From: Trichoplax adhaerens
Taxonomy: Eukaryota > Animalia > Placozoa
Direction of reading: 5' to 3'
Length of the DNA: 64,000 nt
Assembly (NCBI RefSeq): GCF_000150275.1
Contig: NW_002060951.1
Location: forward strand, 865,186 to 929,185
The translations under genes were made by a program, and so were the position numbers. The notes under the pieces are model-generated. The model saw only the letters and a list, made by a program, of their open reading frames with translations, did not search any database and had not been told where the DNA came from. Below are positions 1 through 36,900 of the stretch, one piece after another; within the stretch, counting starts at the first letter, position 1, and each line of letters opens with the position of its first letter.

Positions 1-149
1 TATAATATATATCTACAGTTTATACAACTACTATTATCCAAATTTTAAAAAATCGTTTTCTATTGTTATTTACGTAATTATGTTTACATGGTTAAATTAT
101 AATTTAGACCTCGATTTGACCGATAATAAAATATTACAAGTATTCTTAC

Positions 150-3100: not shown

Positions 3101-6100
3101 TAAAGCTCGGAGTGATATCAATTATCTTCATTAATTACAAAAATTCATTCAACTAACCTGTTATCATAATAGTGCATACGGATTGGCAAGTCTTCTTTCT
3201 TAAATACTTTCCAGTGTTTATTTTTACACTGAAAATACGTGTGTAAAACAGTCGAAGTTAACTTAAGTAGTTTGTAAAAGGCTGAATCGATGCACTTATT
3301 GTCTGAGAAATAATAAATGCACGTATTCTCTAAAAGAATCCTTACCCGCAAGTTTTCTACAACTTCATCAACATTGCCTACAGAAATTGAAGTAAATTAA
3401 GATTTTTACTATTTAATACATTCATGGTTATTTATGGTTTCAAATACTTAAGGTTATCTAGAACTATCCGGTCACATACAGTACACAGTTAACTTGATCT
3501 TATATAGAGTGCAATTTTGGATTTAACAAAGAACAGTACTGCACGTATGATCGAACAATTAAAAGTCAAAGCGAATTTATGTCATGATAATCTTAAAAAT
3601 TTGCATTACTTGTAATTATCTAGTTATATTAAGGATAGAAATCTCTTTAAATATTTATAAATGCCATAGGGAAATATCCAGTAAATTAACTAATCCTATT
3701 GCATTAATAGCCCTCATAAATTAATATTCAATTTCTGAAGCTTATACAGGAAGTGAGACTGTAATTCTATGCCTCACAGTAGAAATTTCTTTTTCTTTAA
3801 TTAATTAATGCCTTCATACTGAAGGTCATCATAAATTATTATCACAAGTGAGATATAAATATTCTGCGTAGTAGGTATAAAAACCTTGTATTCATTGGTG
3901 CTTTTGCATTAAAAGAGTTGACAAATTAGCACTTCATTCATGCGAGTGTCAAGTAGAAGCAAATATCTCATCTCCTATTTGCTAACTTAAACATTGATCG
4001 TATAACAAACGCTAAACTAGTTACTATAATTTTCAAAGCGACGTACCTTCTTTAGTTTGAATACCGCCAAAGGGTCCAGAATTGCGTACATAGACTTCAG
4101 TTGTATTGATATACTACATCAATTACAGATCAAGTAATCAGTTAACGATAGCGAGATCAATATTTTATAACGTTACACTACTAATAATTTATTCATAGAA
4201 AAGATTACCTTGTTGAAATAAAGAATTCGGTTACAGCATGTTTTTCTCATACCTTGAAATGTCAAATAAATAATAAAATTTCACAAGATACATGAATGCT
4301 AGATGATAGCACCTAGTAGATTAAATAGTATTATTCATTAAAGAAATGGCACCATGCTTTATCAGCAATAAACTTAAGTCTTGCATTAAACCTCAAAGTG
4401 TTTTATGCTTACCATGATCTGCGGTTATGATAATATTTACGCAATCTTGCATTCCTCGCTTCTTTAAGCCGTAGAAAATAGCTCCCATTACATCGTCAAC
4501 GATTTTAATTTGCTCATTTACCTAAAATGGATTCAAAATAGTTTATCTTTAATAATGTAAATTTATTTATAACGCAAATTGTATCAATCTAGCCAGGATA
4601 GACATATTGAAGAAATAGAATCTGAAATTATGAAATAAATATTGAAACATGATGGTAGCATACCTCAGCTGAATCTGGGCCATATCGATGTCCTGCAGTA
4701 TCTGGTTGATCAAAATACATGGTTACCATGCTAGGACTGTAGAAAACAGTAGGCCTAGTTAGTCAATTTTCAAACGGCATTGTGGACTGGGCAATCCAAA
4801 AGTATTCAGAAAGCAAAACTTTACCGTTCATCATCAGGCATTTCCATCCATTTAAAAAATTGATCCACGCGATCCATGAAAGGCACTCTTCTATAATACG
4901 TAAATAAGGAAAATATAATACATGCAACGGTCACCTCAGCAAAAAAAATATATTGCGAAGTGCGATATACTTCCATCACAGCACGCGATTATCAATAATT
5001 TATCAACAAATTCAGATCAAGAACGGTAACTACATTTGTGCTACATACCCAGAGTAGGTATACCAATAATTTGGTTGATAGCCTAACAGTGGGAAAGAAT
5101 AGATTATAATTACTATTAACGGTGCGTATTAAATTTCACACAACACAACTAATATCAAGCTAAGAATTTGCTAGTTAGTATTATTTAACTTTTGGTTGGA
5201 TAAAAGAAAGCCCAATGTTCGCGTGCACCAAAAATGTGAATTGAATGCTTTTGATATCGTTTTGCCTCATGAAAATATTATAAGTGCTAAACCATGTTGG
5301 TTATCGCTTTACTAATCATACTACGTTATTACAGTGATTATAATCTACCATAATAGCAATATCATTCTATGCTAAAACTGCTCAATTTTCGAACTTTTCA
5401 ATGTAAATCATTTCTTTAGTTTAGACATCTGTCAAATTCTATGATATCAATTACCTGCAATCTTGGACTCAGAACCGACCCAAAAGTAGCTAGCTGATTT
5501 CAAATTGTGTTTTCTTGCTGTCACCCAAATCTAAAGATAAAAGGGAAACAGCGGTAATATTATAGAATAAATACGTAGTTTGGTCATCACTGATCTTAAC
5601 AGGCAATTTACTCACCGGTTCTCCACCCCACCATCTCGACTGACTCGAATTCTTCGCTCCAATATAAAATTGATCCTTAAAGACAGGATCATAAAAGCTA
5701 TTTCCAATAATGCCATGGTAGGCGGGATACAGACCCTAAATCGTACATGCATAACAAGCGTGACAAATACAATCCCATCTATTTCATCGATCTTTGTAAT
5801 AGAACTAACCGTTACTATAGTATAATGATTGGGAAATGTCTTGGTAGGAAAACTAGATTGCATATATTCGGCTCGAACACCCTCCGCAGCTGTTACATAA
5901 AGCAGTGTTAGGGGGTATAAATAAACCAAGTAAATATTAGAAACGAATTTGCTTTTAAACGATAAATTGAAAAGTTACATATACATACATATATATAGCA
6001 TATATTCTAGTATAAACTAACTTAACTTGATTATTCCGTCTTCGAATTATTTACTCACCAAATTTGGATATATTAGGGGAATATCCGCGATGAAAGTAGT

Positions 6101-9100
6101 TCCAACGAAAGCCATCGAGAGAAACTAGCAACAGCGGTTTGACTTTTCCTCTGATACATTAAGACAATTTAAGAAGCTAGTCAATATCATGACTTGCAAA
6201 TTACAGCAACCATTATAATACTTTCATTGCATCCTATAGCGTGCAGCTCATACTTTTAATAGAAACGGATAAGCTTTTACATACTATGTTAAAATCATAA
6301 ACTATTCTAATTGCATGCATGCATACATACTTGCAAACGCCTGGAATAGGTGGTTTAGTCGGCTTTGAAGTTGTTGGTCGAGAAGTAATGACCGGTGAAC
6401 GCGTTGGTCGCCGAGTCACTGGAGGTACAGTATTAGGAGCTTTAGTTGTTGCACTAGTTGTGCGGGTTATAGTAGAATCCTGTCCGTCTGAATGACTATT
6501 GGCTGCGATATTTTAAATTTACAAGAGTACATTCATTAGAAATGGCTGATAAATTCATTGTACAGCAATATGATTGTAAGATCTCGCTTCCTTCACTTCA
6601 CTTCCATTTGATCAATTTGCTAGAATTAGCAAAATACTTTCTTGTCACAATAAGTACTTATAATTAGAGTATTACTCAACTAGTTAATCCTGAAGGAATC
6701 TTTAAATTTACGTGGCACTACAATGATAAAATAGCCTATAATTCTTATCCAGTGGTTGATTACAACACCACTCTGGTTACATGAATTTAGTATTGACTGA
6801 TAGCTAGTTTATTTATGATTTTATCTGGATGTCTATATATACGTGCATTGTATACGTATAAATAGCATACATTTTGATACTGCTATTTATAGGTTAATAG
6901 ATACGAGCGCAACTTTGTACTTTTTCGCATTCATTACGCAGGTTAGAGGATACTGACTAGAATCTTCGACCAACAACTCTAGGCGATTTATTTACAGTTA
7001 GAATATTGAGTTTATAGTAGTTGGTACATATTGAAGCATAAACTAGTGATTTTCTTCATTAATTAGCATAAAGTTTTGCTTCGTTACCAAGCAGTCATGC
7101 AATGTGTTTATCATCTATCCCATCCATGCTGATTCTATCCCACGTCTGCAACATTTTCACTCTATATCAACAGTCAAATTTACCTGCTCTTTGCGTAAAT
7201 ATACCGATAAGGAGACCAATTGCAAAGGCTACAATGATCAGAATTATCCCGGCAATCTAATTAAAACATTTAGAATTAAAATATCGTAAATTAAATATTA
7301 ATAAGAGTTCTTGGTCTTCACTGAGTTTTGCGTTATGGTCTCGCTTAAACACTTTGCCTGATTATACTTTCTTCTGCGCCGTTGTCTAGATACCTTAGCT
7401 GCCTAGAAATACTAGGCTATATTCCCTGATAAATATACTATATCTACGGTTTAGACATGAGCAAGTCTAAACTAACCTAGAATTACAATTACATTCTATT
7501 GACTCGAACGATATTCAGCATTATAACTCATTTCAGCTAATAATTATAATAATACTAGAAGATCGTGATAGCTAACACCGATCTATACAAACCCTTCTAA
7601 GTGTAAGCAGGTTAGAAACGGATTAACTTACGCTTAAATTTAGAAACAGCCTATTAATCTTATTTAGCTATACGCATATTTAGGGTAGTTTCTAACACTG
7701 GCTAATTAGATTATCATTACTGAGGAATTAATTGCTTTTGGCAATATCTTGAGATCATGTCTTAATTCATGCAGAAATGCCGGATTTTAGTTTATGGCTG
7801 CATATTTATAAGATCATTTATCGCGGTGCCACATTAAGTTATTACAACTCTCTGAAAATGAATATCGCAATCTTGTTAAGTCGTATATTGTATCATGTAT
7901 CGAAGGATTACTAACGAATAAAGGTAAGTTAAGCTAGCAAGGCCTTCTTATTAACATAACTGTAGTTTATTGTGTATTAAATCAAGTATAAAATACAGTA
8001 CATTAGTAGGAGTACCTAACGAGCTTCACCAAGCTTAATTTATATTCATTATTTGCAACTCTAAAGTTAACAGATGTAGCATACAATCACAGAAATAGGT
8101 GTTAAAATTAAGAAAATGTCAATTGTTATTAAGGAAAAGGCTATATCGTATGCGAAGTGAAGGTAATTAGTACCGTAAGTATTTTCGAAGTAACAGCTAA
8201 TTTAAGACATTCATAGCAATAAGGAATTATAATTCTATCATTATTTCACGTAACTTTAATAGATTACAGTATAATTTGCCGTAGCGAATTTATTCTATGT
8301 TTAAATCTTACCAAATAGGATCTTTTTATTTTACCATCCGGTTGCTTCTTACTTTCTTCTTCAAATTGCGCCTTTCAACAACCGTATTGGCGTGGTTGAA
8401 AGGTAATACAGCAGAGAGAAAATAATAAATTTTATGCATATACTCTGAGTCAGGTTAAGTTTCAAGAATTAAATTAGTAGAGATTAATCTATAATACAAA
8501 TTGTTAATTTACACTGGATGAGAGAAGAAATACTAGTTGCTGCAATCTGCTAGGCAGAAAACAAGTACATCACTCTCATTGATTACCAAATAAATTAAAA
8601 TCACCTATGCATTACTGCGGTGAACTCAACATTAGATGAATCAATAGCAAATTTGAACATGATTTACTAGTTATCTTCAATTTTAAGAAGCTATTTATGG
8701 GAACCGAATCATAGTTAAGTAAACTGCAGCTAAATTGAATTATCCTGTTCGATTGGTGACCTTCAGCAAGATTTTTGATATAACTTATATCGCTAGGATG
8801 GGTTAAGCAAGAATATCTCACTTAAATCATCCAATATCAATATTTAATAAGCTCTATATCTATATTTCTAACAGTTTACTAATAACTGCCACTGAATTGT
8901 TTTAGTATAACTTTATATCGCTAGAATGGATTAAGCAAAAACATGTCCCTTAAAATATCCAATATCAACATTTAATAGATTCTATATCGCCATCTCGAAC
9001 AATTTGCCAATAACTGGTATTGATCATCATACGACAAGCGCTTCCTAAAACTTTCTACAAGGAATCCTATAATTTAACTCAGCAATATTATCACTTTTTA

Positions 9101-16342: not shown

Positions 16343-16883
16343 GTTGTAAAATCTGAAGAAAGAATTCATACGATCGATATCAAACGATACATTAGGTAAA
16401 TATGAAACTAAATTTTGCAACTGATAAATAAGAACCAAACGGAAATGGTAGTTGCTACTGAAGATAACTTCTGCATATGTTATATGAATATTTAGGCTTA
16501 ATTTTCAATAGAAGCTACAACAATATTATAAGAATTTATTCGTATGTTTTCTACAATATTTATTAAAATAGTGTCTTATTGCAAAGTTGTTATTCTGATT
16601 AATAAATTTTGATGTATAAATATTAATGATTACCGTAATTCATCCATGGCCGCATTCATCAAGTGTTAAAGTATAACTAATAGAACATGATGTTGAAATT
16701 AAGCTATTCAGTAGGAAATTTAATAAGGGGATTTCAAAATATTGTAACTGGAACTTTGTATATATCATTATTTTGTTGATAATATCATGATTACTAAATC
16801 ATAATATGATTCGTTATTCATTTTCATAGTTAAACTAAAAGTATTATCAACTACTGTACGACACTCATAAAGCTGCTATAATT

Positions 16884-18671: not shown

Positions 18672-21600
18672 CTAAAATGTTGTCCACATTTCTGTTGCAG
18701 CTTCACTTTCTATCCTGTCTTGTAGATCAGGCGCCATGTTAGGGAAGAAATTAATTCCAGTCAATTCTTCAATATCGCGAACGCTAGCCACATGGCTAAA
18801 TAAGTAGGAATTATAGGTCTGTTAAGAGTAGAAGAAATAAATATTAATAAAAATAGGATTAATAGAATCAAAAACCTCTCTGTTTTATATTTCATTTTTG
18901 ACATATCGTATATAAAGTGATGAGGGATTACAATATGTTTATGTTCAATTGCCATTCTCTACCTGGCATTGAGGAGCAAATGATTTAATATGTGGTAAAA
19001 TAAATGCTATAACATCAATTTTTCCCTTGCAAGGCTTAGCAGTCATAACTGAAGAGTCGCAAAGTAATTGATCAGAATCTTGACATTTAGCTAAAATTTT
19101 ATAAAAATGGGTTGGAATGACCACGGAGCCAATATCTCCTTTAAGCCAACTGACAAAGAAAGTAGTATGAAGTAGGATAAAACAAGGAACAATTTTCGCC
19201 ATCATTTGATATTTAGTTATAGAGAATGCACTCTAAGTATACTAGATTTTCAGAAATTATTATTTAACTTACTACGATGGATTACCCACGACAGTTTTCC
19301 AGTCAGCTTTGACAATTGAGCCTGAAATGACATAAATACTTCCAAATAGCCGAGCCCAATCGCGAGTTAATTTTTCCAAATCAAGCCAAGGTCCTTGATT
19401 GATTATGAGATAAAATTAGAAATTTCCTATGTTATCTTTAGGTATCTTTACAAATTATCTGATTGTTAGAGAAATTGTTTAGCTATTTGATATTCAATCA
19501 GCTTGTGAACGGTCAAGAAACATTCCCATTATTTGAATGAACTCAGACTAGCGTTTACCTGCATTAAAGGCGTAGACTTGTGGAGCAATATTGGATAGAA
19601 TAAACGTATTCGCTTGCGCTTCTAAATCAAAACTCATATCACCTGAGCATATAATCAAGGAATTATTTTAGATATCGTTAATTATTAATACAAGTTTCAT
19701 CAGATCGTTGTGTATTGGAACTAAAAATGACTAGAAGCCAACTATTTGCTACCATTAGGTGCTAAATGCCCACGATTATAACCAGATCGATAGTAATTAG
19801 AACAATTAGATGTTTGGGCAGCAACATTTAGCCTACTATCACGTCGAAAACAGTCTATTCTTGATAGTGGCCTTAATGATTCCTATAAGAATTTAATTCC
19901 GAGATAGAATTTTAAGTTACAATATTTTTTCCATTAATTAGGTCATTATTGGACATCGACCATTAACAAACTTACTGTATCAGTTAAATGATAGCCAACA
20001 AATAACGGTACATGAAAGGTATTGCTGTATCCAGTTATATAATGATTCTGGTATAGAGTACAAGTATCCAATGATGCTCGATATCTGGGTATTCCCCACG
20101 GAAAGTTGCGATTCTCAGACTCTTTCTCTGTTGTAATATATTTCGTTATATATAAAGTTAATCATAGAAATAGAGTATGACCTCTGCAGTTATGAAAATG
20201 ATAATCTATGGATTATTTCAGTTTTAGACCTTGTTGTTGTGTCATTCTGAGAGCTTGATTAAAGATGGTGAGATTTACCGAACTCTTAAATTTTTAAATA
20301 GATAAAAGCCTTCGCTCAACGATATTAGGTATGGCTAATCTGTTACCGAGCTGAAAAACTTTTATTTGTTTTCCATCTTTAATGAAAAATATTACGTGAA
20401 CGTACAAGATTCCTTAACTATTTTTTAGTTACAATCCTACAAGATCTACCTTACAATCTGGACAAACACAATCAGAACAATTTTCTCTATCGATATAAAC
20501 GTTATGATCTTGTGGTACTCGACAGACTGACCCCAACTGACCAGCAATCTGGGTAGCTGCAGCCGTAGAATTTTGCAAAATGAAATTCAGTCTTCCTATA
20601 GTGCCATCATTTTTAGCTGGTTTAATCGATAAGAGAGCTATACAAGGCCAGAAAGAAAATTAGTAAAAATTAAGCTCTTGTTAAGTACCTATTTCTTAGA
20701 ATGAATTAGAAATCGACTTTGACACATTAGCGAATAGCGTTAGTAAATTATTTAGTCTTAGGGCTTTACTAAGATCAAACTGAATATTTTATACATTATC
20801 TGCCGTGTTATTACAGAAAATTTAAATTGAGAACTTTGTGGCTAATTGCCGTCACTGTAAGGTATAACTGTACATCCCACATACTTCAAAACTAAAAATT
20901 CTATTTCTATACTTTACTAGATATGCAAGAATTATGTCTATTAATCCTGGTGTACGGTAAGCCATGAACGTCAAAAAATGGAGCAAAGGCATCATGTCAG
21001 TGATTTATCTCTAAGATATTGCATAAAATTAAGATTTGATTATGATCTGCATAGCTAAAAGTTGTCACAACATCATAAAGGAAAGTTTTGCAAAAATTAT
21101 TACATGATTATCCAAAAAGGTGCATAGACTGGATCAAGTGACTAAGTCATCCATTACCTGCCATGATATTGTATAGTTCAATGTTTTTAAACGGTTTAAT
21201 TGTGAGTGATTTTTTAAATCCAGGGCCAGCAGCGAAAAAGATAGTTCTCATATCAGGGTCTAAATTGTCCCAGCCATGATTAGCGCCATTGCAGGATGTA
21301 TCTGCTGGGTTATATCTAGAATTGTTCAATCAGAAAGCAGATTTAGAATTATCGGATAGGCTATTTTCAAATTTAGTAACACGGTAATGTCGAAAAGTAT
21401 TTCTGTACTACATTTAGATTGTACTGTAACTATAATCTACTCATAATATAGACATTTTATATTGCTCTTAAATATGGATACCTTTATAGTCTGTTTGTAC
21501 CATATTCAAATATGGCTCGCTGTGTTTAGTTATTTATAGTATTTACAGTCTTCACTATTTTCTACTACCATTTGCTATTACATAGTCTGTTACGATGCAT

Positions 21601-24600
21601 GTTGTATTCCATTTTGCAATCTTGTTCTCTACTCGTGTTTTATCTCAGAAGCTATAAGAAGCGCCGATTTCTACCTTAGAAATCATCAGTTGCACTAGTC
21701 GCAGTAGTAGTACTTCCTAACGTCACTTCATGGCAGCCTACACGTTGATCTACCGTAACTAGCGCATTTTAGCTCCACTACTATCTAAACATAGTATCCA
21801 CTTTTATTAAAATTCATTGCTTAATTTATGTAAATGACTAATAAGTCCGTGGCCGCTGACTCTTCGAACCCTCCATCACAATTTATATTTTACATCCCTC
21901 TAACAATAAATTACTTAAAAATAAGCCCAGATATTCCTAGATTTAGTCTCCCTACTGATATTAATAGGGCGAAATAGAAAATAAAGTATAGCTAAATTAA
22001 AATCCTTTTCCGTATTTAGTACTATCGATTCTTTTTCCAAAATATTAGCAAAGGATCCGTCTATTAAAACAATAGGATTTGGTTAAAGTAAGGTAAGGAG
22101 AGCTTAATCAATTATTTACTAAAGATATTTCACGGATTTAGCTTAATTTTCTACGCTGCATTATGCGCAAATATTTGAGAGATAAATCACCAAATCAATC
22201 AACTGATGATGCCGGTTAATTTAAATTTCAATACAATTAGTAAATATCAACGATCAGATGGAGCGATTCCCTTTCTTAGAATAAATAGGGTACGGTAATC
22301 CTGAGTAAAGGTACTTCGTTGATTTAGCTTAACTTTCTACACACTTTAATCATGATGCTATAGGTATAATCATCCACCTAAATCTATTACAACAGGTAAC
22401 AGTTACTTCATATTTCCATAATAAAATACTAGCGTTACCAATAGCGAAACAGGTGCAAGATGATATTGTAACGGTAATATTAAATTGTCTCTAGTTGTGT
22501 GGAACATGGTGTCAGTTCCGCATATGTTAGCGCTATATATATGTTATTGATTATCTATTGGTGGGAATCGAAAGATGTAGCGGTGTTAATGGGCCTCTTG
22601 GCGAGAAGTGCAGGTGGAAGTCCTAGAAGATTGACTATTGGTCGAGGAGCTGAGAAACAAGGTTCGAGGCGATATAAACAAGACGCGGACCATGTTAAAG
22701 GGCTTCTATACTGTAGCCGTTACGATATACTATTTTGTATAGGGAAAATTGTGATAGAGTTTTGATGTAAATATTTACATCAAAGATAGATATATAAGGA
22801 GGCTAATATAATTGTAGAAGTAGATAGATTCATTCATAGGTTAGCTTGAAGAAGACATAGTAGTTATTCTTTTGATATTATATCCGTAGTTTTTAATGCC
22901 TGTATTTTAACATCGTAATAAACTTTTTATATGATATATAATTTCTTACTTAGATTAGCTAGCTGAAATAAGATTACTTACGTTGACCCTACCAGCCAGT
23001 TTTCATTTGGCATAATAATTACATCTGGAATACGGCTATACAAATGAAGAGTATACCATATACAAGCTCATTGTCTTTATATCCAGTTGGGCATATCAAA
23101 ATCTCAACTGCATCATGTGTTATACTCTCTTTACCTGTTGTTACAATAATGAAGTCGATAGGGTAATTCTTCTTTCTTATATACGCTCCAATGTTTGAAT
23201 TTGCACTAATTTCACAAAATAGGTTGATCTACTTTATTTTCATTTCTACTTTAGAATTGTTGGATATACCAAATATTTTTGCTTACTTTTAATTTCTGTA
23301 CAAGCTCCGTAGCGTTTCCTATCATTATGAGACAGTCAAATCTTCACTCAGAAAGTATAGGCTAATCGTGATAGTTATTTCATGGCTATCTATTCCATTG
23401 ACGCTATTTAATTCTTCATCAATTTTACCTCCATGAATTCGAATACCACCAAATGGTCCACGATTAATAATGTTATAATGACCGATGTCGATTAACTGAA
23501 AGAAACATCATACTATTGTAAGTAGACAGTGTGCAGCAATATTTGACTCAACAAAGCAGGATTCTATCATTGTTAACTTACTTGGTCGAGATAGACCACC
23601 CTTTTGCAGCATGTTTTTCTCATTCCTTGTCAAAGATAATAGGACAAATTCAAATATCTTTAATTTAGTCATTAGCATTTTTGCTTTATTGCTATCAAAA
23701 AGGAATTAGGGTCTGTACAATCGCGAATGAAAAATGTTAGCGAGCTAAGTAGCTTTGAATATATCAATTAATTTCCTATAATCAAGAAAGCATATTTCGT
23801 AGGATATTACAGGTATCTATAAATGTAACTAATATAACTCAAGTTACAGTATTAAGCATTCTACATTTGTACAGCATACAGTACACGGTATAAAGTTACT
23901 GAACCTCTGACAGGTCTATCAAATGGTAATACTATCTGTTAAATGAGCACATTATCGTAAACCGTCAGCAAAGCGACGAGAGTTTGTACTAGTATAACCG
24001 ATACTAACCATGATCTGATGTCACGATAATATTGACGCAATCCTCTAATCCTCTTTCCTTTAATCCTGAAAATATAGCTCCAAGAATATCATCTACTCTT
24101 TTAATTTCATAATCAACCTAAAAATCAATAGTAACTTCATCAGTATTCACGCGCAATATATCCGGCTGAGAATAGAATATTTGCTATCTACCTGATTAGA
24201 ATCTGGACCATAAAGATGCCCTACACGATCTGGCTGGTCAAAGTACATGGTAATGATCATAGGCCTACGAGCATAAATAATTACCATACGTTATTATTAA
24301 AGCCATAGACGAATCGTCATTAACTGCCATTTTAGTACGTAATTGGAGCAGTTTTATACAATCTGGAAATGATTGCAATTTCAATTGTTAAACTTTCCTT
24401 GCTATTCGCTATTTTGATGTTGTGGTACTTATTTTTGAACGTGAGATATCGCATACTCGTATATGCGTATAAGCAAACTTTGGATGATCGTAATTTTACT
24501 ATGTACCATAGATTCTGCATGTAGCATTTGTATAAATGTGAGCTAAACTACTGTTGATAACGATATTTAGCTATATAGTGTTAACAGTATAGAATAATTA

Positions 24601-27600
24601 GGCTAAATGTGCAGTTATTTGGAGAACAGTGATGTAAATTGGATGATTATGGGTATTATTTGCACTCTTAACTTTACAATGTAAAATGTCGATTTATAGC
24701 TTTAATGAAGCAGGTATAAGTTACCTTCGATCTGCTGGCATTTCGAGCCATTTAAATAACTGATTTACACGATCTATAAAAGAAACGCTCCTAAACAGAA
24801 ATTAAAATCATCACATACTCATTAACTTATGGGAAGTTCTAGAAATTAGACGATTGCGTTGCTCACAATCAATCGATCAGGATCAGATTATTTGCTACTG
24901 ACATGAATAGCCATTTATGTCCAAAGGCTGATAACAATGAGATGAATAATCTTACCTGTCATAGGGAAACCAGTAATCTGGTCGATAACCTATATTAGAA
25001 TATGCCGTGACGAATATTGTAATATTATATAATATTGGAAAAGAAATTTGTATTTCGCCTACTTTACAGGAGCAAATAATGTCAAGAAATTACTTTAGAG
25101 CTTATTACCTTGGATTTTCGCTTCTGAACCTGCCCAATAAAAACTGGCTGATTTTAGATTATTCTTTTTAGCCGTTACCCAAATCTAGAAAAACGATATT
25201 AGCATACTTAAAATTGCCTATCAGGCACTTTAATGCTCTCTACGTAGATACATCGATGATAAACTAATCATTCGAAACATATTTCAGCCTCAAAAATGAA
25301 GACAAAGCTATATGAACAAGGAGCTTTAAAATACAGAAGGATGAAAAATTACGATACATGTCTATATATTTTGCAGACATTCTTGTTATGACAATCAAGA
25401 TACTTTGCAAGTTAAAAGACTTACTGGTTCACCTCCCCACCATTTGGATTGATTGTTATTTCTACTACCGATATAAAATGTTTCGCCTAGTTCCGGATCG
25501 TAAAATGTATTAGCAACGATGCCATGATGTGCAGGATAGAGGCCCTATATCGCAAATAATCAATAATACCCCTAAGTAAGGTCAAGCAATAATTCTATTT
25601 ATATTTTACAGCATCAGAGCTTACTGTAACAATAGTATAATGATTTGGGAATGTTTTAGTTGGAAAGCAGGACTGCATATATTCCGCTCGGACACCTCGG
25701 CTGGCTAAAATAAAGTGAAATGATTAAGAAAGATAAATTGCAACGAAGTACATTCTAACTGTACAGGTGTCAAAGTTATCTTTAATCCTATAGATAAAAA
25801 ATATAATGTTAGCAATATAGAATAAACTGCAATAACTGGTCAACTATGAATCGAAGCTGATTGCTTAAGACTATTAGACAAGTAATGAGGCTATGCTTGA
25901 TATTTTGGACTGCTAACCCGACAACAAGCAATCAGCTAAATTTATCATACTGTCNNNNNNNNNNNNNNNNNNNNNNNNNNNNNNNNNNNNNNNNNNNNNN
26001 NNNNATCGTCTATCGTCAAATTTGAACCATTTGTGACTATAAATACTGCTATAGATCAATCATATGTCTAAGATTTTCAATTTTATATATGTACAGTACA
26101 GTATGCTAAATCAGTTTTCGTAACTTACCAAACTGCGTCAGCATGGGAGAAAGTCCTCGTTTAAAATAATCCCAGCGAAATCCATCAACGGAAACCACAA
26201 TCAAAGGTTTCCTTTTAGCGCTATCGATTTTGTTAGATGAAAAATTGTAGTTCATATCGTTTGATTAGAGCACATAGAAATGGGTAAATCGGAACTGACT
26301 AGTAAAAGATTTTGTAAACGTCTGACAATATCGTAGAAGGAAAATGGGCAGTAGCTTAAGATAGTATCTACCTGCAAATTGAAGCATCTATGGAAGGTGG
26401 ACCACTATTAACAGGTATCGTAGAGCGTGGAGGAGATGCTGTGAATTGATTACTACTATTGTTATTACTATTATTATTGCCTTGATTACTTTGGTCAAAG
26501 CCTAGAAAGAGTAATGTTCTTAATAAGAGGCCAACGATAATCATTCAGCTAGACCATAGTATTATAAAAGCTCAAGCATCTACAGTAACTGATCTAATTC
26601 CTAACCTTTATCACTTGAAAACCAACCAATAACAAAGCCTCCAGTAAATGCCAATAACAGGGCGAGAGCGCTTAAAACCTAAGCAGGAAACAAATTTGAT
26701 GTCCGTTTAGTAACATTGATTTTATGCTATTGGCAATAATGCATTTAAAATCACATCTAAAAATATCAGGTGGACTATACGATCTACATTATTTGCATGA
26801 TGAATTCAGGAAAAGTTTTGTCATAGGACATGAGATAGCTTAATTACTGCTATGATGGTTTCGTTGATCTTCAGACCAGTTCAGTCAAGCACCAATATTA
26901 GAACAGTCATAAAATAAAAATGAGATCGACTTTGCTAAGATTCATTCCAGCTTTTGAGACAATCAACTGTCATTAATCACTAGAAACCTCTATTAATTCA
27001 TTATGCAACAGTTTAATTGTTGCTATTAGGATAAAGTTAACCTTTTAAGTTATTTAATCGGTTAAAACTGGAATGGCCATAAATGAGGCAGATTGCTGAA
27101 ACTTTTTCGAATTTCTTAATCACTAACTGCTGGATTATTAATAGCTCATTTAATGCAGCATGTGTTAGCTTAATTGCTGCTACGATGGCGATGTCAGGAA
27201 TGTAATCGCTTATAGTGCCAATGGAGAATAATTTAACAAGCAAATTAAATCAGTTTGATTATACGATGTATTTCTGATAGTAAAAAAGTAATCAATACTA
27301 ACTTATCCTCTTGAGAAATCTTATAACGCAGCAGAAAGGTACCGTACTATAATTTAAATGCTGTTCTGGCGATATTAAATTCTTAGCTAACGCAATCCAC
27401 TGCCGGTACCAATAATAAATTAATGTTCGTAGGTCAAAAGTTTGGTTTGATGTTAAAACAAATCTTGAAACTGTCAAAAGTTACACAGATACAGCAACCC
27501 ATCTAAAGCAACAAATGTTAGTTCCATGACTGTCATGATAATACTCTTAATTTTCTATTTCTGTTGGTTTAATTATTAACTGATGCTAATATCAATTGAA

Positions 27601-28647
27601 AACAGATCGATTTTGTCTAATCTCTCAAAGCATTCAAATTTTTTATAACCATTAGCAGAAAGTTTTCATACCTAGTAATCAGCTACCTATAAGCATTGAT
27701 AGCATTTAGAATTTAAATGAATATGCTCAATCCCCAAGGTGTAATAAAAACAAGGTAAATTTCTTCGTACTAACCATCATAAACGCCGTTTTACGTCTGT
27801 TTCTCAAACGATATTTTTTCTCATATTCTTCTATATTACCATTTTTATCCTATGAAAATGAAAATGGAGAATCAAAATCTGTTTTAAATATAACCAATAG
27901 AGAACTTATTATGTTCATTGTCGCTGTTATCCAAAGCACCTTCTATTGCATATAGAAATCTTGTCGAATTTTGAGAGAAGCAAATATCAAATAGCATCTA
28001 TTTTTGTAGCTTATATACAATAAATTTGCATAGAAATTTTAGCACTATATTTGCTCCATGAAGTATGCCGTATGTACTTGAACTGCAGAATATGAAAAAG
28101 TAAATTTTAACTAGCGTAATTGCATACTTCTAGGTACACTACTAGTAATCTAAATTAATCTGAAAGGGATCAGATTAGAAACATGGTGTTCTGAGAATTG
28201 GATAAAAAGCGGGTGGGCAAAATCAGTTACTTCGATAGTGATAATGATAGAAAAATGATGATTATTATGTAACTGAGGTTAAAATAAGATAAAGATAAGC
28301 AATCAATTTCATAATTATGAATTAAATATCGCTTGTGTTTATAGCCATCTAAATTAATCCAAATTAGACGTAACCCGACATACAGTACAAGGGAGAGTAA
28401 AACTAGTATGCAAAATCAGATTACTTTAATTTATGACAATCTTATGATAGCGATAGAGAGATGGAAATTATCTCAGCTAAAGTGAAGTTAATCAAGATAA
28501 ATTATGTAGTAAGTATACAAATAGATAGTAAATTGGCCTGTAGTTTTTTACCACTTGCTGTTCTAACAATTCAAAGTAATTAGGAAAGACTATTACATAT
28601 TTGTAGATTAATATCATCAACTGACTGATTACCATGTTATCGGGCAT
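18672..28647 (-). CDS. ENPP-family paralog B: type II membrane phosphodiesterase plus EndoG/NucA-type nuclease domain with intact active-site residues; multi-exon, apparently complete
   Basis: Exons give MPDNM (28633-28647), a basic cytosolic segment, TM VLSALALLLAFTGGFVIGWF, an Asn/Ser/Pro stalk (26372-26501), [96 protein letters not shown] and stop TAG at 18672-18674. Confidence 0.92.
22467..22724. mobile_element. Candidate solo LTR or short non-autonomous insertion (~258 bp) in an ENPP-B intron
   Basis: Begins TGTAACGG and ends CCGTTACG (7/8 inverted match). It is flanked by an (G)ATAT direct repeat, is GC-richer than its surroundings, and sits in an intron much longer than the equivalent introns of A and C. 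Confidence 0.5.
25955..26004. other. Assembly gap (50 N), intronic in ENPP-B
   Basis: Run of N; the flanking exons splice in frame, so no exon appears to be missing. Confidence 0.95.
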
Positions 28648-30925: not shown

Positions 30926-33900
30926 TTAATAAGTGGGCCATAAATCAGTTGGAGAATCGCTCTCAATCATATCCTGCAACTGTATAGGCATATTGGGGAA
31001 GAAGTTAAGACCAGTCAACTTCTCAATTTCTCGAACGCTGGCCACATGGTGAAATAGGTTAGAGTGATAAACCTGTTGGTACAAAATAGGAAAAAATCGA
31101 ATTGAATTAATGTTACTTTCAGCCTAGTTTATCCATCTTTTCTTGTATTAAAATAGATAACAGTGCATAAATACTACAAAAGACCATTTTAAAGGAGGAA
31201 TATTAAACATCAGCATCCTCTCGTTTCATATCATCTCTATTTTCTTAATTAATGAAACTTATCAGTCATATCTGAACTCAACTATAGCATAAACATAGTT
31301 GTTGGCACATATGGCTAAGTGCAAGGACTGATGATTTAAATATTTGGTGTGTTATGATCTTGGTACTAGCATCGAATTCGCCATAAAAGGAAGGAGATCA
31401 ATAGAATGAGCTGCTTATTTTTCAAGCATTTCCTTAGTATTTTGTGTACTACAATATTCTAGATTAACATATGGGCAAATATAGAGAAAATTCATCCACA
31501 GGCAGATAATTGAAATTTTTCTATGCACAGAAATGAAGGAAGGAGAGCTAATGGGATTGATAACGTATTGTTGAGTGTTACTGTAGCTAAGTTATTTGCA
31601 AATCATTCTAGATAGATATGAGCGTAGATTTGTACCTTACCCGTATTTATGCAAGAGACTATAAAATAGACATCATGAGTTATCATGCTTAAGGGTTAAA
31701 TTATATTAGCAATCACACGAAAAGAAATCTATAAAAACTTATTCTTCAACACCTCTCTACTATGTTAGCGATAAGCTATGATCCTTTTAATAACTAGCTT
31801 ACCTGGCACTGTGGTGTAAAACTATCAATATGAGGTAAAACGAAAGCAATAACGTCGAGGTGGCCCTTGCATGGTGAGGAAGTGATGACAGAAGAATTGC
31901 ACAAGACTTGATCAGAATCTCGACATTTGGCAATAATCTTGTAGAAGTGAGTTGGAATGACTACACCACCAATTTCACCTTTAAGCCAACTTAAAAATAT
32001 AGAAAACATTCTCCATTAATTATTCTGATATAGATTTTATGGTTCAAGATTCGATCGTCGGTAATTGAGCTAATTATGTAACTAAAATAGGAAAAAGTTA
32101 ACAGTAACTTACTAGGATGGATCACTCCACACGGTTTTAGGATCTGCCTTGACAATTGAGCCAGAAATGATGTAAACACCACCGAAAATTTTGGCCCAAT
32201 CACGGCTTAGTTTTTCCAGATCTAGCCACGGACCTGTCAAAATTTGAAAATAATGTTTCATTTCCAGCCTTAAGTATTTATTAAATCTTTTGCAATCTAT
32301 GACTTTGAAGCTGCAGTTCTTATCGTACCAATATAATGAAATATCACGGGTTATTATAAATATAAGGAATAAATTACCGGCATTGAAAGGATATTTTTGA
32401 GGAGCAATATTGGACAAGAGGAAAGAATTGCCTTGTGCTTCCAGATCGAAACTCAGTCCGCCTAGAAATGAAATTAAATTAGGATTACTAAATATGAGGA
32501 AGGGTTGCTATCTTTTCATTTCCGTTCACTTTAGACTATGAAAAGATATTCTAACAGAATACTATAATTTTCGTTTCTCACCATTAGGAGCTAAATGGCC
32601 GCGATTATATCCAGATCTATAATAGTTTGAGCAATTAGATGCTTGAGTAGCAATATTTAAACGAATATCACGTCGGAAGCAATCCTTTCTACTTAGTGGT
32701 CGCAATGTTTCCTAATAAAGTGCAGTAAAGCAGATGATGAGATGTTGTTTGTTAATCGAATGTGGGAAGAGTCCTTAAATCAAGTTAAATGAAGGTGAAT
32801 GGATAAAAGATTCGATCATGCTCCTATAGAATAAGTTTATGCCTTTAATATCAACTTACCACATCAGTTAGATGATAGCCAGTAAATATTGGCACACGAT
32901 AAGTATTGCTATAACCGGTAATAAAATGCTTTTGATACAGAGTACAGGTATCCATCGATTTTCGGAATCTTGGTATACCCCACGGGAAATTACGATTTTC
33001 AGATTGCAGTTCTGTTTAGTTAATGATGTTATCAATATAATATATTAATTGTCAATTTTATGATAGGAACTTTGGGTATACAACTTATATGCGGTATTAA
33101 GAACCTTCTTTTGGGGTCATTATTAGGCCTTTATTGAATAAAGGAACATTGATCGTGGCCTATAATCGTCACAAAATAAAAATGTGCTAGTTACGGTGAC
33201 ATAATTCAATCTATTCAAGTTTAGATCTAGCCTCCTCCACTTTCTGTGATGGTTTACTAAGATAGAAGAATATTTATCACGATTTATCATTAAAATAGGG
33301 ACTTTACCTACTACAACAACTCCAAAAGGCGTGAGAATAGATGATACAGTATGCATTAATTATATATTATTAAGCTAGCCCTGATGTATCATAAATTCAA
33401 CTTACTTTGCAATATGGACATACACATTCTGAACAGTTTGCTCTTTCATCAAAAACCATCTGATCGGTAGGTACTCTGCACACTTTACCTGCTTCGCCAA
33501 GATTTGGATCAGTAACAACTACGGGATTGGTTAAGATACTATTCAAACGTCCCATGTTCCCATCATTCTTAGCCGGTTTTACACCCAGTAAGGCTATATA
33601 AATTATGTTGCCAACAATCAGAATTTTAATCTTCTATTCTATAAAATTCTACGGTCTAACATTGCCTCAATGTCGTTGTTATTTTAACTGGTTAATGAGA
33701 ATATGTTGCTAAAGGAATGATCCTACTAATTATTAAAGTACCTGCCATAACGTTGTATAATTCAATATTCTTGAACGGTTTAATTACTTTGGCTTTCTTG
33801 AAGCCAGGACCAGCAGCCATGAAGATTGTCCTCATATCAGTATCTAAATTATCCCAGCCATGGTTAGCACCGTTACAAAATGTATATCTTGGATTATATC

Positions 33901-36900
33901 TGTGTGTTCCAATTACATGCAGTGATGTGAGCATCATATCCAATAGAATGAAGGAAAAGTAAAGGCATTAAGGAAGTATAAAGACGAAAGTCCAACCTAT
34001 TATCCGAATTAGCATCATTTATAAAACTTACGAAGGTCTCACAAGCCAATTCTCATTAGGTAAAATAATTACATCCGGAATACGACTACATAAAGAAATC
34101 AAAGCAAATTCAAAAATAAGTGTTACCACGAAATTTAAGATGCATAAGATGAAGATTGATTAAGAACATAGTTATATTCTTTAATCACTAATTTAAGATA
34201 TCCTATCGAATATATGGTAATTGATAGCATGAATTTACATCCTAAAATGATTTAATCTTTCAATTTCAACAGGGATAAATATTAAACATAGAAAAAGATG
34301 GAACGCTATGTTATCAGAGCTTCACGATATTCGTTATGATACCATAAAATTAAAGTACGAGCTCTGCCATCTACCAAGTTAAGTTACCTGTTATTATCAT
34401 AATGGAATCGAACAGGCATATCCTCCTTCTTATAAACTCTCCAGAATTTGCTCTTACACTTTGACATAAAAAATTGAATTTTAAATTAATAATTATAGCT
34501 AGCAAAGTAAGAATCTACGAAATTCCCAAAGAAGTCATAATCTAGTTATTATGATAAATATAACATACTCTTAACTTTTCAGCAATTTCAGTTGCATTTC
34601 CTGTATTAAGTAATGGAGCAATAAGTTATTAAAAAATCCTGCAGATATTAAAAATGCAGGAAGAATAATTACAGGTATCAAATTAACTTTACCTCCTTTA
34701 ACACGAATTCCTCCAAAAGTTCCGCGATTAATGATATCGTTGGTTGTAATATTGATAAACTAGAATAACAAGAGATCTTTAGCGATATTTTTATGAAGAT
34801 TAGTCTAGCTTTTTATTTATTCTCGGTTTATCCAATTCCACTTACTTGATCGAGGTAAATCATCCTTGAACAACATGTTTTTCTCATACCTAATTGAAAG
34901 ATAGCATTGCACAACATTAAATCCGGTCACCAACTATTCAACCTTTTCAATTAGAGATCAGGATACAGTAAATCAATCTTTCATTTCACTTTAATTAATT
35001 TTATATTACTTATAGTCAAAAACAAGAATAAACTAACCATGGTCTGAGATAACAATAATATAACACAATNNNNNNNNNNNNNNNNNNNNNNNNNNNNNNN
35101 NNNNNNNNNNNNNNNNNNNNNNNNNNNNNNNNNNNNNNNNNNNNNNNNNNNNNNNNNNNNNNNNNNNNNNNNNNNNNNNNNNNNNNNNNNNNNNNNNNNN
35201 NNNNNNNNNNNNNNNNNNNNNNNNNNNNNNNNNNNNNNNNNNNNNNNNNNNNNNNNNNNNNNNNNNNNNNNNNNNNNNNNNNNNNNNNNNNNNNNNNNNN
35301 NNNNNNNNNNNNNNNNNNNNNNNNNNNNNNNNNNNNNNNNNNNNNNNNNNNNNNNNNNNNNNNNNNATACGATACCATAGTTAGGTCGATAACCTGAACA
35401 ACAAAAAACTCTTAAGATGATTTATTCGTATAGTGCATTTGAATGGCATCCTTACAGATCTATATATAGATCAATCTAGCTCAGCTAGATCTACGTCATA
35501 ATGCCAGCCAGCACTGAATTTTGCTACCAAGGCTAACCTTTAATTTCCGATTCAGAACCAACCCAGAAGTAACTTGCGGCTTTTAAGTTATTTTTCCTTG
35601 CAGTAACCCATATCTGAAAGGAAAAGAGTATCTAGTTATAGTATTCATTTTTGTAAGTGTTATAACTGAAAAATTAAGAGCTAAATGAGAGAAAAGGTGG
35701 CAACAATGTGAGAGTTGGTCATATAATCTACAACGAATGTTTTATTTGTTAAACATATTTCTATCCACATCAAGATCGGCCTTTGTCAATAATTAAGTGA
35801 ACTAATATCTCAAAAGTTTTGAGATATTTTGATCTACACTCCATATGATAGATTTTTCCTCGTTAAAATACAAACCATAGCCAAAAAGAAACACATCTAT
35901 CTCCATGGATTGTGATTATTTTCTAATTATAGAATGGTTACGATTCTATTGGTAAACATCATCATGCCTATTGTATAGTCACCATAAAATTGGCCAAATT
36001 GCTAATGCTCAAGATACAACTAAGTCTATAGCTATGTTGCAGCCTTAAATACAAAGGACAGGAAATAGAATATTGATAAAGATCTATATGAAATCATGCG
36101 AAATTGTAAATTTTATTATGATATTGTATGGTAATTATCATCATCCGTGAATGACCGAATTATAACTATCAATACAAGATTATGTATAAAACTACGTTTC
36201 GTGATTAACTTAAGTCTATATTCTACAAAGATAGTACCAGTATGAGGGATGCTGATCTTTAAAGTTTTATCAGCTAGAGCAACAAACTGTAGCAAGTATA
36301 TTACTAGCATTCTAAATCAAATTTTGATATAGGAAAACAATTTAATCAACTACATTTCTAATCATAATGGCATTGTTACACAGATCAGATCCCATCATAA
36401 TCATAGCTAAAATGCAAATTATCTTCGCGAGAAAAAATCTAATTTACTGAAATTGAAGATATGTTACGCTATTTTACACAGAAATACTATTCTTAGGACA
36501 TTGAAAGGCAATTATCAAGGAATTAATATCATTGTCAGATTCTCCTCATTTAACCGAATAACATTTTTCAATCAGAACATTATCGACTAGTACGCTAGTA
36601 ACTAAACTTAAAATGTGATTCGTTCTAAAATTTTTAAACACTTACAGGTTCACCTCCCCACCATTTAGATTGGGTGCTATTCTTAGCGCCAATATAGAAT
36701 TTATCATTGAGTTGGGGATCAAAGAATGTATTCGCCACGATGCCATGGTGGGCCGGATACAGTCCCTATTTGGATGGAAAACTGTCTGATTTATATTTTA
36801 TTTAATATTGGTAGCTAAAGAAAGAAATAGCTATAAAGTAAAATCTATTAAGATACTCTAAAATTAAAACTGATTGATAATGAAACTTACAGTCACAATA

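What the first reader, a model, noticed from the sequence alone, without database searches (positions are those of the whole stretch)
19273..19882. ENPP-B keeps a complete EndoG/NucA endonuclease active site: candidate dual-function ecto-nuclease
Seen: three spliced exons give SRIDCFRRD...YYRSGYNRGHLAPNGDMSFDLEAQANTFILSNIAPQVYAFNAGPWLDLEK. Established: DNA/RNA non-specific endonucleases of the beta-beta-alpha-metal class (EndoG, Serratia NucA) use an upstream Arg, the (D)RGH general-base His, a Mg-ligand Asn about 30 residues later and a Glu 8 residues after that. In vertebrate ENPP1/2/3 this domain is a catalytically dead scaffold. Here His, Asn (+31), Glu (+8) and both Arg are present with EndoG-like spacing; only D of DRGH is changed to N. 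The phosphodiesterase Thr nucleophile and Zn ligands are intact as well. Inference: one membrane-anchored chain may combine endonuclease with nucleotide-releasing phosphodiesterase activity, degrading extracellular nucleic acid to nucleotides (external digestion or defence). It may represent the ancestral state of ENPP1-3. The motif spans short exons and is invisible in the ORF track.
Basis: partly seen in the sequence, partly recalled or inferred. Interest (0 to 1): 0.9.

Follow-up and report, generated by a model that had tools for sequence, protein, structure and literature searches.

The report
Placozoan ENPP keeps live nuclease site
A membrane enzyme of Trichoplax from the ENPP1-3 family still has every catalytic residue of an EndoG/NucA-type nuclease in the domain that is dead in vertebrates, and cnidarians have it too, so this domain probably began, and here probably still works, as a real nuclease.

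Summary
The window is from Trichoplax adhaerens, and the gene is TRIADDRAFT_58867 on the minus strand.

The spliced product reads Arg...Asn-Arg-Gly-His...SNIAPQ...Asn(+31)...Trp...Glu(+8)...Arg(+4), in register with EndoG, EXOG and NucA. The phosphodiesterase Thr nucleophile and metal ligands are also intact.

The whole protein aligns in one stretch with human ENPP3 (E 8e-121). Its model superposes on ENPP3, ENPP1 and venom phosphodiesterase.

New here:
- The same complete site is present in every cnidarian class sampled (sea anemones, stony corals, hydrozoans, jellyfish).
- It is lost in sponges, octocorals and all bilaterians sampled.
- In 30 intact sequences, 11 of 12 catalytic or substrate-binding columns are invariant.
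- Paralogues B and C show omega of about 0.05 in the nuclease core. Paralogue A has decayed.
- A domain tree supports one ancient fusion with several later losses.

The literature I could read describes the whole ENPP group as lacking the catalytic histidine.

Nuclease activity, exposure of the site in the two-domain protein, and the biological role remain untested. Verdict: a real and well-conserved new variant of a known family. The dual-function reading is likely but unproven.

The parts
18675..28647 (-). ENPP-B gene = TRIADDRAFT_58867 (P0025, 818 aa in the database model): N-terminal signal-anchor, PDE domain, linker, NUC domain
   Evidence: Exon-by-exon matches of P0025 in its own genome. 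Identity of P0025 to the RNA-spliced model.
19975..20127 (-). First NUC-domain exon (..NFPWGIP..)
   Evidence: RNA joints 20127>20230 and 19881>19975.
19751..19881 (-). Exon with the upstream Arg (CFRRD) and Asn-Arg-Gly-His
   Evidence: RNA joints. Pfam Endonuclease_NS 24.1 bits. Aligns to EndoG and NucA.
19844..19846 (-). Codon of the Arg equivalent to Serratia nuclease R57
   Evidence: Invariant in 30 intact ENPPs.
19766..19777 (-). Codons Asn-Arg-Gly-His (the DRGH motif with D>N). His is the general base.
19558..19640 (-). Exon with SNIAPQ and the Mg-ligand Asn (codon 19563-19565)
   Evidence: RNA joints. Pfam 27.3 bits. Aligns to EXOG. Codon position.
19273..19392 (-). Exon with Trp (19386-19388), Glu (19374-19376) and Arg (19362-19364), followed by the VISGS strand
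   Evidence: RNA joints. Pfam 23.4 bits. Aligns to EndoG. Codon positions.
18963..19149 (-). NUC exon (..IPTHFYK..AFILPH..), the ENPP-type C-terminal part
   Evidence: RNA joints. Aligned with ENPP3 within the single stretch 129-802.
18675..18818 (-). Last coding exon and stop codon
   Evidence: RNA joint 18818>18963. Translation.
20230..20284 (-). Small linker exon present in RNA but missing from the database gene model
   Evidence: Joints 20127>20230 and 20284>20450. Comparison with P0025.
20450..20637 (-). Cys-rich linker ('lasso'-region) exon
   Evidence: RNA joints. Translation.
25598..25723 (-). Open frame holding the PDE exon with the Thr173 nucleophile (FPTKTFPNHY). Exon limits not set by RNA here.
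   Evidence: Pfam Phosphodiest 37.4 bits. T173 invariant.
26109..26264 (-). Open frame holding the PDE exon with metal ligand Asp137 (VSVDGFR)
24150..24290 (-). Open frame holding the PDE exon with Asp293 and His297 (DQPDRVGH)
24008..24115 (-). PDE exon with Asp340 and His341 (TSDHG)
   Evidence: RNA joints..
21158..21315 (-). PDE exon with His444 (NHGWDN)
   Evidence: RNA joints..
30929..39646 (-). Paralogue C = TRIADDRAFT_58868, with the same intact nuclease set (catalytic codons 32204-32675)
   Evidence: tblastn mapping. Codon comparison.
129..8374 (-). Paralogue A = TRIADDRAFT_58865, nuclease site decayed (R>H, N/D>E, R>K, N>K, R>N at codons 517-914; His and Glu kept)

Best explanation
ENPP-B is an expressed, type II membrane-anchored ecto-enzyme of the ENPP1-3 type, without SMB domains. 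Its C-terminal domain is not a dead scaffold but a catalytically competent Mg-dependent beta-beta-alpha-metal nuclease of the DRGH (EndoG/NucA) class, fused to an intact nucleotide-releasing phosphodiesterase.

Shown: the residues, the splicing, the fold, the conservation and the purifying selection.

Inferred: His635 activates water. Asn666 holds Mg, positioned by Asn632 in place of the usual Asp. Glu674 orders the Mg water shell. Arg609, Arg633 and Arg678 bind the phosphate backbone. The domain cuts extracellular DNA and RNA into oligonucleotides with 5'-phosphate and 3'-OH ends.

Also inferred, from the known chemistry of venom and ENPP-type phosphodiesterase I: such oligonucleotides are the substrates that the PDE domain trims from the 3'-OH end to 5'-mononucleotides. 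One chain would then take nucleic acid to nucleotides at the cell surface.

This is probably the ancestral state of ENPP1-3. It is kept in Placozoa and Cnidaria, lost once at the base of Bilateria, and lost separately in sponges, octocorals and single paralogues.
For: - Splicing and transcription are shown in three studies, and the joined frame is open.
- Each exon passes Pfam Endonuclease_NS and aligns best to active nucleases.
- Full-length P0025 matches ENPP3 6c01 at 8e-121 in one stretch, and EXOG at 4e-20 on residues 569-798.
- The model has pLDDT 84.6 and pTM 0.81, with strand 631-635, strand 658-662 and helix 663-684 at pLDDT 86-95. The whole model superposes on NPP3, venom PDE and ENPP1 with TM up to 0.87.
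- The intact set is found in Trichoplax adhaerens and sp. H2, Nematostella, Exaiptasia, Actinostola, Acropora, Porites, Oculina, Desmophyllum, Pocillopora, Hydractinia, Hydra, Clytia, Sanderia and Rhopilema.
- In 30 intact sequences, 11 of 12 catalytic or substrate columns are invariant. In 129 other ENPPs the same columns are scrambled.
- B versus C: pS 0.73, core pN 0.11, omega about 0.05. Paralogue A has core pN 0.33 and has lost four key residues.
- In the tree all ENPP NUC domains group together (SH-aLRT 93) and the bilaterian dead domains form one clade (100).
- In this family the His predicts activity: Tsal proteins with Gln have only residual activity, and Serratia H89Q has under 0.001% (PMC3479092).
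- Loss of the DRGH Asp lowers activity less than loss of the His (PMC3025545).
Against: - No enzymatic data exist.
- The Asp of DRGH, which positions the Mg-binding Asn, is Asn in paralogues B and C, so their activity may be lower than in TRIADDRAFT_64138 or the cnidarian proteins.
- I could not read the model's coordinates, so I did not test whether the linker or the PDE domain covers the site. The only indirect evidence is a review statement that only the C-terminal part of NUC and one EF-hand-like Asp touch the PDE domain in ENPP1-3.
- ENPP-B lacks the EF-hand-like DxDxDG loop that stabilises NUC in other ENPPs.
- No cell-type or localisation data were found.
- The clade of all ENPP NUC domains has SH-aLRT 93 from a quick search only, with no bootstrap.
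Confidence: 0.6

Rival explanations
1. The nuclease residues are kept, but the domain works as a nucleic-acid or nucleotide binding and holding module, or purely as a scaffold, with no useful endonuclease turnover. It would feed or position substrates for the PDE domain. Activity could be blocked by the D>N change, by the linker, or by a missing cofactor geometry.
For: B and C have NRGH, not DRGH. In EndA the D157A change diminishes activity. Relatives in this family can act mainly as high-affinity binders (Tsal). In ENPP1-3 the domain has a proven structural role. Site exposure is untested.
Against: Tsal lacks the His, while here the His, the Mg-ligand Asn, the Glu and three Arg are invariant in 30 sequences from two phyla. 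A pure scaffold tolerates their loss, as 129 other ENPPs show. When constraint relaxes (paralogue A, octocorals, Sanderia paralogue 2), the first residues to go are the catalytic ones. Cnidarian proteins and TRIADDRAFT_64138 keep the full DRGH.
Confidence: 0.27
2. The nuclease domain is active but works independently of the PDE domain and for another purpose than feeding. It might degrade foreign or biofilm DNA as defence, or clear the animal's own extracellular DNA. The tandem array would reflect diversification of such functions.
For: There are five tandem paralogues with different site states. Extracellular nucleases of this family serve defence or offence in many organisms (PMC5714182). 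I found no evidence tying the gene to digestive cells.
Against: The fusion has been kept for the whole history of the family with both sites intact. The nuclease products (5'-P, 3'-OH) are the natural substrates of phosphodiesterase I, which is established enzymology and was not tested here. None of my data separates this reading from the best explanation.
Confidence: 0.1
3. Artefact: a pseudogene, a mis-spliced reading, or chance motifs.
For: None found. The database model misses one small exon.
Against: There are spliced RNA contigs from three studies and an open frame. Omega is about 0.05. The Trichoplax sp. H2 orthologue has an identical motif block. All three exons pass Pfam.
Confidence: 0.01

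Closest known systems
Vertebrate ENPP3 / ENPP1 / ENPP2 (autotaxin) and snake venom phosphodiesterase
   Same: The PDE domain has a Thr nucleophile and two-metal site, followed by a Cys-rich linker and a C-terminal Endonuclease_NS-fold domain. There is one continuous alignment (ENPP3 6c01, E 8e-121) and whole-model superposition (TM up to 0.87). A type II anchor is present, as in ENPP1 and ENPP3.
   Different: There are no SMB domains (no PF01033). ENPP-B has no EF-hand-like DxDxDG loop. Most importantly, the nuclease His, Arg, Asn and Glu are all present. Vertebrate proteins read PGF/YGF/YAF where RGH should be, K/T/Q for the Mg-ligand Asn, and H/Q/N/S for the Glu.
Mitochondrial EndoG and EXOG; Serratia and Anabaena NucA (DRGH-type beta-beta-alpha-metal nucleases, Pfam PF01223)
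   Same: Motif order and spacing match: Arg, (D)RGH, SNIAPQ, Asn at +31, Trp, Glu at +8, Arg at +4. The exon-level best PDB matches are these enzymes. EXOG matches at E 4e-20 over the whole domain.
   Different: The domain is fused behind a phosphodiesterase and is extracellular and membrane-anchored. The Asp of DRGH is Asn in B and C. It carries the ENPP-specific C-terminal extension (AFILPH...) that docks on the PDE domain.
Cnidarian 'ENPP3-like' / 'venom phosphodiesterase' proteins (e.g. Nematostella XP_048584755, Hydractinia XP_057300015, Acropora, Hydra)
   Same: The architecture is the same and the nuclease set is intact. NUC identity to Trichoplax is 41-45%. These are the true nearest relatives outside Placozoa.
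   Different: They keep the canonical DRGH and the EF-hand-like DxDxDG loop. No paper that I could find comments on their nuclease site.
Tsetse Tsal1/2 (Endonuclease_NS proteins with Gln for the catalytic His)
   Same: Secreted members of the same fold that take part in handling extracellular nucleic acid during feeding (PMC3479092).
   Different: Tsal lacks the general-base His and has only residual activity. ENPP-B has the His.

Membership tests
ENPP1-3 subfamily (NPP with nuclease-like domain) | PDE domain (PF01663) with Thr nucleophile and six metal ligands | tested here: met
   Pfam on exons. PF01663 is listed for P0025. D137, T173, D293, H297, D340, H341 and H444 are present and (nearly) invariant.
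ENPP1-3 subfamily (NPP with nuclease-like domain) | C-terminal Endonuclease_NS-fold domain joined by a linker, packed on the PDE domain as in solved ENPP1-3 | tested here: met
   Single-stretch alignment of residues 129-802 to ENPP3. Foldseek whole-model TM 0.86-0.87 to rat NPP3. This is a predicted model, not a solved structure.
ENPP1-3 subfamily (NPP with nuclease-like domain) | [quoted passage not shown] | tested here: not met
   No PF01033 for P0025 or any non-chordate relative. It is present in vertebrate hits and in one of the two Clavelina (tunicate) hits.
ENPP1-3 subfamily (NPP with nuclease-like domain) | EF-hand-like DxDxDG calcium loop in NUC | tested here: not met
   ENPP-B reads KADWKT at that place. 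Cnidarian and vertebrate proteins read DxDxDG.
ENPP1-3 subfamily (NPP with nuclease-like domain) | NUC domain lacks the nuclease catalytic residues (as the family is described in PMC8808174 and PMC5714182) | tested here: not met
   All are present except D>N. This is the point of the finding.
DNA/RNA non-specific endonuclease, DRGH type (PF01223) | Pfam PF01223 match over the cut-off | tested here: met
   Each of three exons scores 23.4-27.3 bits against a 23-bit cut-off. Paralogue C whole domain scores 111.8 bits. Own-genome scan.
DNA/RNA non-specific endonuclease, DRGH type (PF01223) | General-base His in the RGH motif, with the preceding Arg | tested here: met
   R633, G634 and H635.
DNA/RNA non-specific endonuclease, DRGH type (PF01223) | Asp of DRGH, which positions the Mg-binding Asn | tested here: not met
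   It is Asn632 in B and C, Asp in TRIADDRAFT_64138 and 25 of 30 intact ENPPs, and Thr in Oculina. Alanine at this place lowers activity but less than loss of the His in EndA.
DNA/RNA non-specific endonuclease, DRGH type (PF01223) | Mg-ligand Asn about 30 residues after the His, and Glu 8 residues later | tested here: met
   N666 (+31) and E674 (+8), aligned to EndoG LNQNAW..LE (spliced junction). Invariant in 30 sequences.
DNA/RNA non-specific endonuclease, DRGH type (PF01223) | Substrate-binding Arg residues (Serratia R57 and R131 equivalents) and Trp | tested here: met
   R609, W670 and R678 are invariant in intact ENPPs. The equivalence to Serratia numbering rests on my knowledge of that enzyme plus the alignment.
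DNA/RNA non-specific endonuclease, DRGH type (PF01223) | Beta-beta-alpha-metal finger fold | tested here: met
   Model strands 631-635 and 658-662 and helix 663-684 at pLDDT 86-95. Predicted only.
DNA/RNA non-specific endonuclease, DRGH type (PF01223) | Mg-dependent cleavage of DNA and RNA | not testable with these tools
   Needs recombinant protein.

The most novel reading that the evidence does not exclude
The ancestor of all ENPP1-3 enzymes was a bifunctional cell-surface machine: an active EndoG/NucA-type endonuclease fused to a phosphodiesterase that together turned extracellular DNA and RNA into nucleotides. This machine still operates in placozoans and cnidarians. The 'nuclease-like' scaffold of human ENPP1, ENPP3 and autotaxin is its fossil, inactivated once at the base of Bilateria.
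Probability: 0.5. Interest if true: 0.75.

Novelty: new variant of a known kind. Interest (0 to 1): 0.66.

Why it matters
ENPP1, ENPP2 (autotaxin) and ENPP3 are heavily studied drug targets, and why they carry a dead nuclease domain has never been explained. The reviews and the His-Me finger classification that I could read state that the whole group lacks the catalytic histidine.

Here the full site survives under strong selection in two early-branching animal phyla. That gives a concrete and cheaply testable origin story: an active nuclease fused to a phosphodiesterase for complete breakdown of extracellular nucleic acid.

It also points to a so far undescribed nucleic-acid digesting enzyme in animals that feed by external or gastric-cavity digestion. 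And it offers natural intact/decayed pairs for study: Trichoplax paralogues B and C versus A, the two Sanderia paralogues, and hexacorals versus octocorals.

Tried and rejected
- **Joined model.** Exons were searched one by one by reference. The exons were joined only inside sandbox scripts, from coordinates, to check the frame, to compare with P0025 and to count codon changes. From then on I used the database protein P0025, whose nuclease domain is identical to the spliced model.
- **Exon searches against PDB.** Exon-level PDB searches did not reach ENPP1-3 at all. Only the full-length protein did.
- **Site exposure.** The ENPP1 and autotaxin structure papers are not held.
- **Literature on the gene.** No paper mentions the four gene identifiers. 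Papers on placozoan secretory cells and on non-bilaterian digestion do not mention nucleases or ENPP, in the text or in the one supplement held. Searches for cnidarian or placozoan ENPP nucleases gave nothing relevant.
- **First dN/dS script.** It failed because of a faulty co-linearity filter and was redone.
- **'Stand-alone' nuclease P0007.** It is the closest short hit to the RGH exon. It nests beside Clytia in the tree and comes from a 1.6 kb contig, so I read it as a fragment of a hydrozoan ENPP and not as an independent nuclease.
- **High RNA depth in two introns.** This is not a small RNA gene (no Rfam or tRNA match). Both spots are dispersed repeats.
- **Survey limits.** The word-indexed searches may miss intact-site ENPPs in phyla not sampled, such as ctenophores. 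The list of losses is therefore a minimum, and 'only Cnidaria and Placozoa' is provisional.
Full report
**What is there.** The window is G000:C1406:865186-929185 of a 105.6 Mb, 32% GC genome with short introns. Database names identify it as Trichoplax adhaerens. The finding lies on the minus strand.

**Splicing.** I laid contigs of four public runs from four studies on 18500-24400. Three of them (X7, X8 and X13; X13 is on record as RNA) show joints that remove 19882-19974, 19641-19750, 19393-19557 and 19150-19272. Eleven further introns are removed as well. Each skipped part ends CT..AC, which is GT..AG on the minus strand. The fourth run holds unspliced pieces and looks like DNA.

The three exons are therefore 19751-19881, 19558-19640 and 19273-19392. 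They are present in the transcripts and are not skipped. Joined in a script, the RNA-supported exons give one open frame from the phosphodiesterase SDHG motif to a stop near 18675.

**Which gene.** The one large representative search, run with the RGH exon, led to Trichoplax protein models. P0025 (TRIADDRAFT_58867, 818 aa) is ENPP-B. It equals my spliced model except that the database model omits the 55-base exon 20230-20284, which the RNA supports. I did not send the joined model to any search tool. Exons were searched singly by reference, and from then on I used P0025.

**The nuclease site.**
- Each of the three exons alone passes Pfam's cut-off for Endonuclease_NS.
- Their best matches among solved structures are Drosophila EndoG, Anabaena NucA, human EXOG and EndoG. 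ENPP1-3 are not found at this level.
- In P0025 the residues are Arg609, Asn632-Arg633-Gly634-His635, Asn657 in SNIAPQ, Asn666, Trp670, Glu674 and Arg678.
- The spacing is His to Asn +31 and Asn to Glu +8, the spacing of EndoG in the alignment once the true splice junction is used.
- The only departure from the canonical set is Asn for the Asp of DRGH.
- In EndA that Asp positions the Mg-binding Asn, and changing it to Ala lowers activity less than losing the His does (PMC3025545).
- In this family the His is a good predictor of activity. Tsetse Tsal proteins with Gln at that place keep only residual activity, and Serratia H89Q keeps under 0.001% (PMC3479092).

**The rest of the protein.**
- P0025 aligns to human ENPP3 (6c01) in one stretch over residues 129-802 at E 8e-121. 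It aligns to ENPP1 and autotaxin at about 1e-108 to 1e-102, to the PDE-only ENPP4-7 at 1e-78 or weaker, and to EXOG at 4e-20 over residues 569-798.
- The PDE metal ligands, Thr173 and Asn176 are present and invariant or nearly so in a 50-sequence alignment.
- A 23-residue hydrophobic stretch follows RLRNRRK, as expected for a type II anchor.
- An AlphaFold model built on that alignment has mean pLDDT 84.6 and pTM 0.81. It shows strand 631-635, strand 658-662 and helix 663-684 at pLDDT 86-95, which is the beta-beta-alpha finger.
- The whole model superposes on rat and human NPP3, cobra venom phosphodiesterase and ENPP1, with TM up to 0.87 over about 730 columns.
- Differences from vertebrate ENPP1-3: there are no SMB domains and no EF-hand-like DxDxDG loop.

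**How general it is.** A full-length search and two NUC-domain searches gave named relatives from many phyla. Cluster look-ups named the rest.

The complete set is present in:
- three Trichoplax adhaerens paralogues and their Trichoplax sp. H2 orthologues;
- sea anemones (Nematostella, Exaiptasia, Actinostola);
- stony corals (Acropora, Porites, Oculina, Desmophyllum, Pocillopora);
- hydrozoans (Hydractinia, Hydra, Clytia);
- scyphozoans (Sanderia, Rhopilema).

It is absent from octocorals, two sponges, an annelid, echinoderms, amphioxus, tunicates, arthropods and every vertebrate sampled. In 30 intact sequences, 11 of 12 catalytic or substrate-binding columns are invariant. The twelfth is the DRGH Asp (D 25, N 4, T 1). 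In 129 other ENPPs these same columns are scrambled.

**Selection.** Between paralogues B and C the synonymous sites are saturated (pS 0.73). Non-synonymous difference is 0.145 in the NUC domain and 0.11 in its catalytic core, lower than the 0.21 in the adjoining PDE and linker part. Omega is about 0.05.

Paralogue A (TRIADDRAFT_58865, window 129-8374) has a core pN of 0.33 against B. It has lost four key residues while keeping His and Glu. This agrees with the two neighbouring first-stage notes.

**Origin.** I built a maximum-likelihood tree of 50 NUC domains.
- All ENPP domains, intact and dead, group together apart from bacterial and fungal nucleases (SH-aLRT 93).
- The order inside broadly follows animal phylogeny.
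- The bilaterian dead domains form one clade (100).
- Separate losses occurred in sponges, octocorals, a second Sanderia paralogue and Trichoplax paralogue A.

The simplest reading is one ancient fusion with an active nuclease, followed by repeated inactivation. The support value comes from a quick search without bootstraps, so this point is good but not settled.

**Mechanism.** Shown: the residues, fold, transcription, conservation and selection. Inferred: the domain cleaves DNA and RNA by the Serratia/EndoG mechanism, with His as general base and Asn-bound Mg. Its products carry 5'-phosphate and 3'-OH ends. These are the substrates that ENPP-type phosphodiesterase I trims to 5'-mononucleotides, which is established enzymology of venom phosphodiesterase and was not tested here. 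I put 0.6 on an active, bifunctional enzyme.

The main rival, at 0.27, is a binding or scaffold role with little turnover. It is kept alive by three things: the D>N change in B and C, the missing calcium loop, and the fact that I could not test whether the linker covers the site, because the model's coordinates were not readable. A review states that in ENPP1-3 only the C-terminal part of NUC and one Asp of the calcium loop touch the PDE domain (PMC8808174). That argues against burial by the PDE domain but says nothing about the linker.

**Comparison with what is known.** The ENPP review says none of the catalytic residues are present in ENPP1-3. The His-Me finger classification says the whole ENPP group retains neither the His nor a Tyr counterpart and is presumed inactive (PMC5714182). 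My searches found no paper on an ENPP with an intact nuclease site, on these Trichoplax genes, or on nucleases in placozoan digestion.

The proteins themselves are in public databases under automatic names. This is therefore not a new gene but a new, unremarked variant of a known family.

**Verdict.** Activity, exposure of the site and biological role remain to be tested.

Noticed in passing
G000:C1406:833645-904831 (window -31540 to 39646): Five ENPP1-3-type genes lie in tandem on the minus strand: TRIADDRAFT_64138 (833645-841096, canonical DRGH), a copy at 847017-854479, paralogue A (58865), B (58867) and C (58868). Exons of the 847-854 kb copy and of paralogue A give identical scores at a constant offset of 16,751 bases. 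This is either a very recent segmental duplication or an assembly duplicate.
   Followed up: partly
window 20230-20284; window 30929-39646: Database gene models are imperfect. TRIADDRAFT_58867 lacks an RNA-supported 55-base exon. The 715-aa model of TRIADDRAFT_58868 lacks PDE exons that the 857-aa Trichoplax sp. H2 orthologue has and that map to the window.
   Followed up: partly
window 23870-24000 (intron of ENPP-B): A dispersed repeat of about 125 bases: 470 first-look candidates, and the 40 or so scored copies are 90-100% identical. RNA contig depth here is 500-2900 against about 5-10 on the exons, with many different flanks. No Rfam or tRNA match.
   Followed up: yes
window 22560-22900 (1.67 kb intron of ENPP-B): A second dispersed repeat, with at least 30 copies at 80-100% identity, several clustered on contigs C1377 and C1394. 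RNA depth reaches 150. Element type not determined.
   Followed up: partly
window 12422-16504, minus strand: An uninterrupted open frame of 1361 codons full of TPR-like repeats (..NHPDVA.SYNN.G.VY..QGKYEEAISMYEKSLKI..) lies directly downstream of ENPP-B.
   Followed up: no
P0053, P0055 (Branchiostoma); P0057, P0060, P0062 (echinoderms): Amphioxus and echinoderm ENPP NUC domains have Tyr at the catalytic His position. Two amphioxus proteins also keep the Asp, Gly and Glu (D-I-G-Y ... E). The His-Me finger paper mentions Tyr as a counterpart of the His in some groups, so these may deserve a look.
   Followed up: no
one search hit table: SMB domains (PF01033) appear only in vertebrate ENPP1-3 hits and in one of the two Clavelina (tunicate) hits. 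No non-chordate ENPP1-3-type protein in the list has them, so the SMB pair looks like a chordate addition.
   Followed up: no
G000:C1411:6305205-6306137 and 6310126-6310542: Two neighbouring loci give the strongest Endonuclease_NS matches in the genome (50.4 and 44.3 bits per exon). They are probably the stand-alone EndoG/EXOG-type genes of Trichoplax.
   Followed up: no
window 19608-19609: One low-depth RNA contig of run X13 (labelled as a different organism from most runs) reads AT>TA, changing a non-catalytic Asn (QANTF) to Ile. It is probably a strain or sister-species difference.
   Followed up: yes
window about 25950-26010: A run of N (an assembly gap) lies in the intron between the first two PDE exons of ENPP-B. 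The flanking exons are contiguous in the protein, so no exon seems lost.
   Followed up: partly
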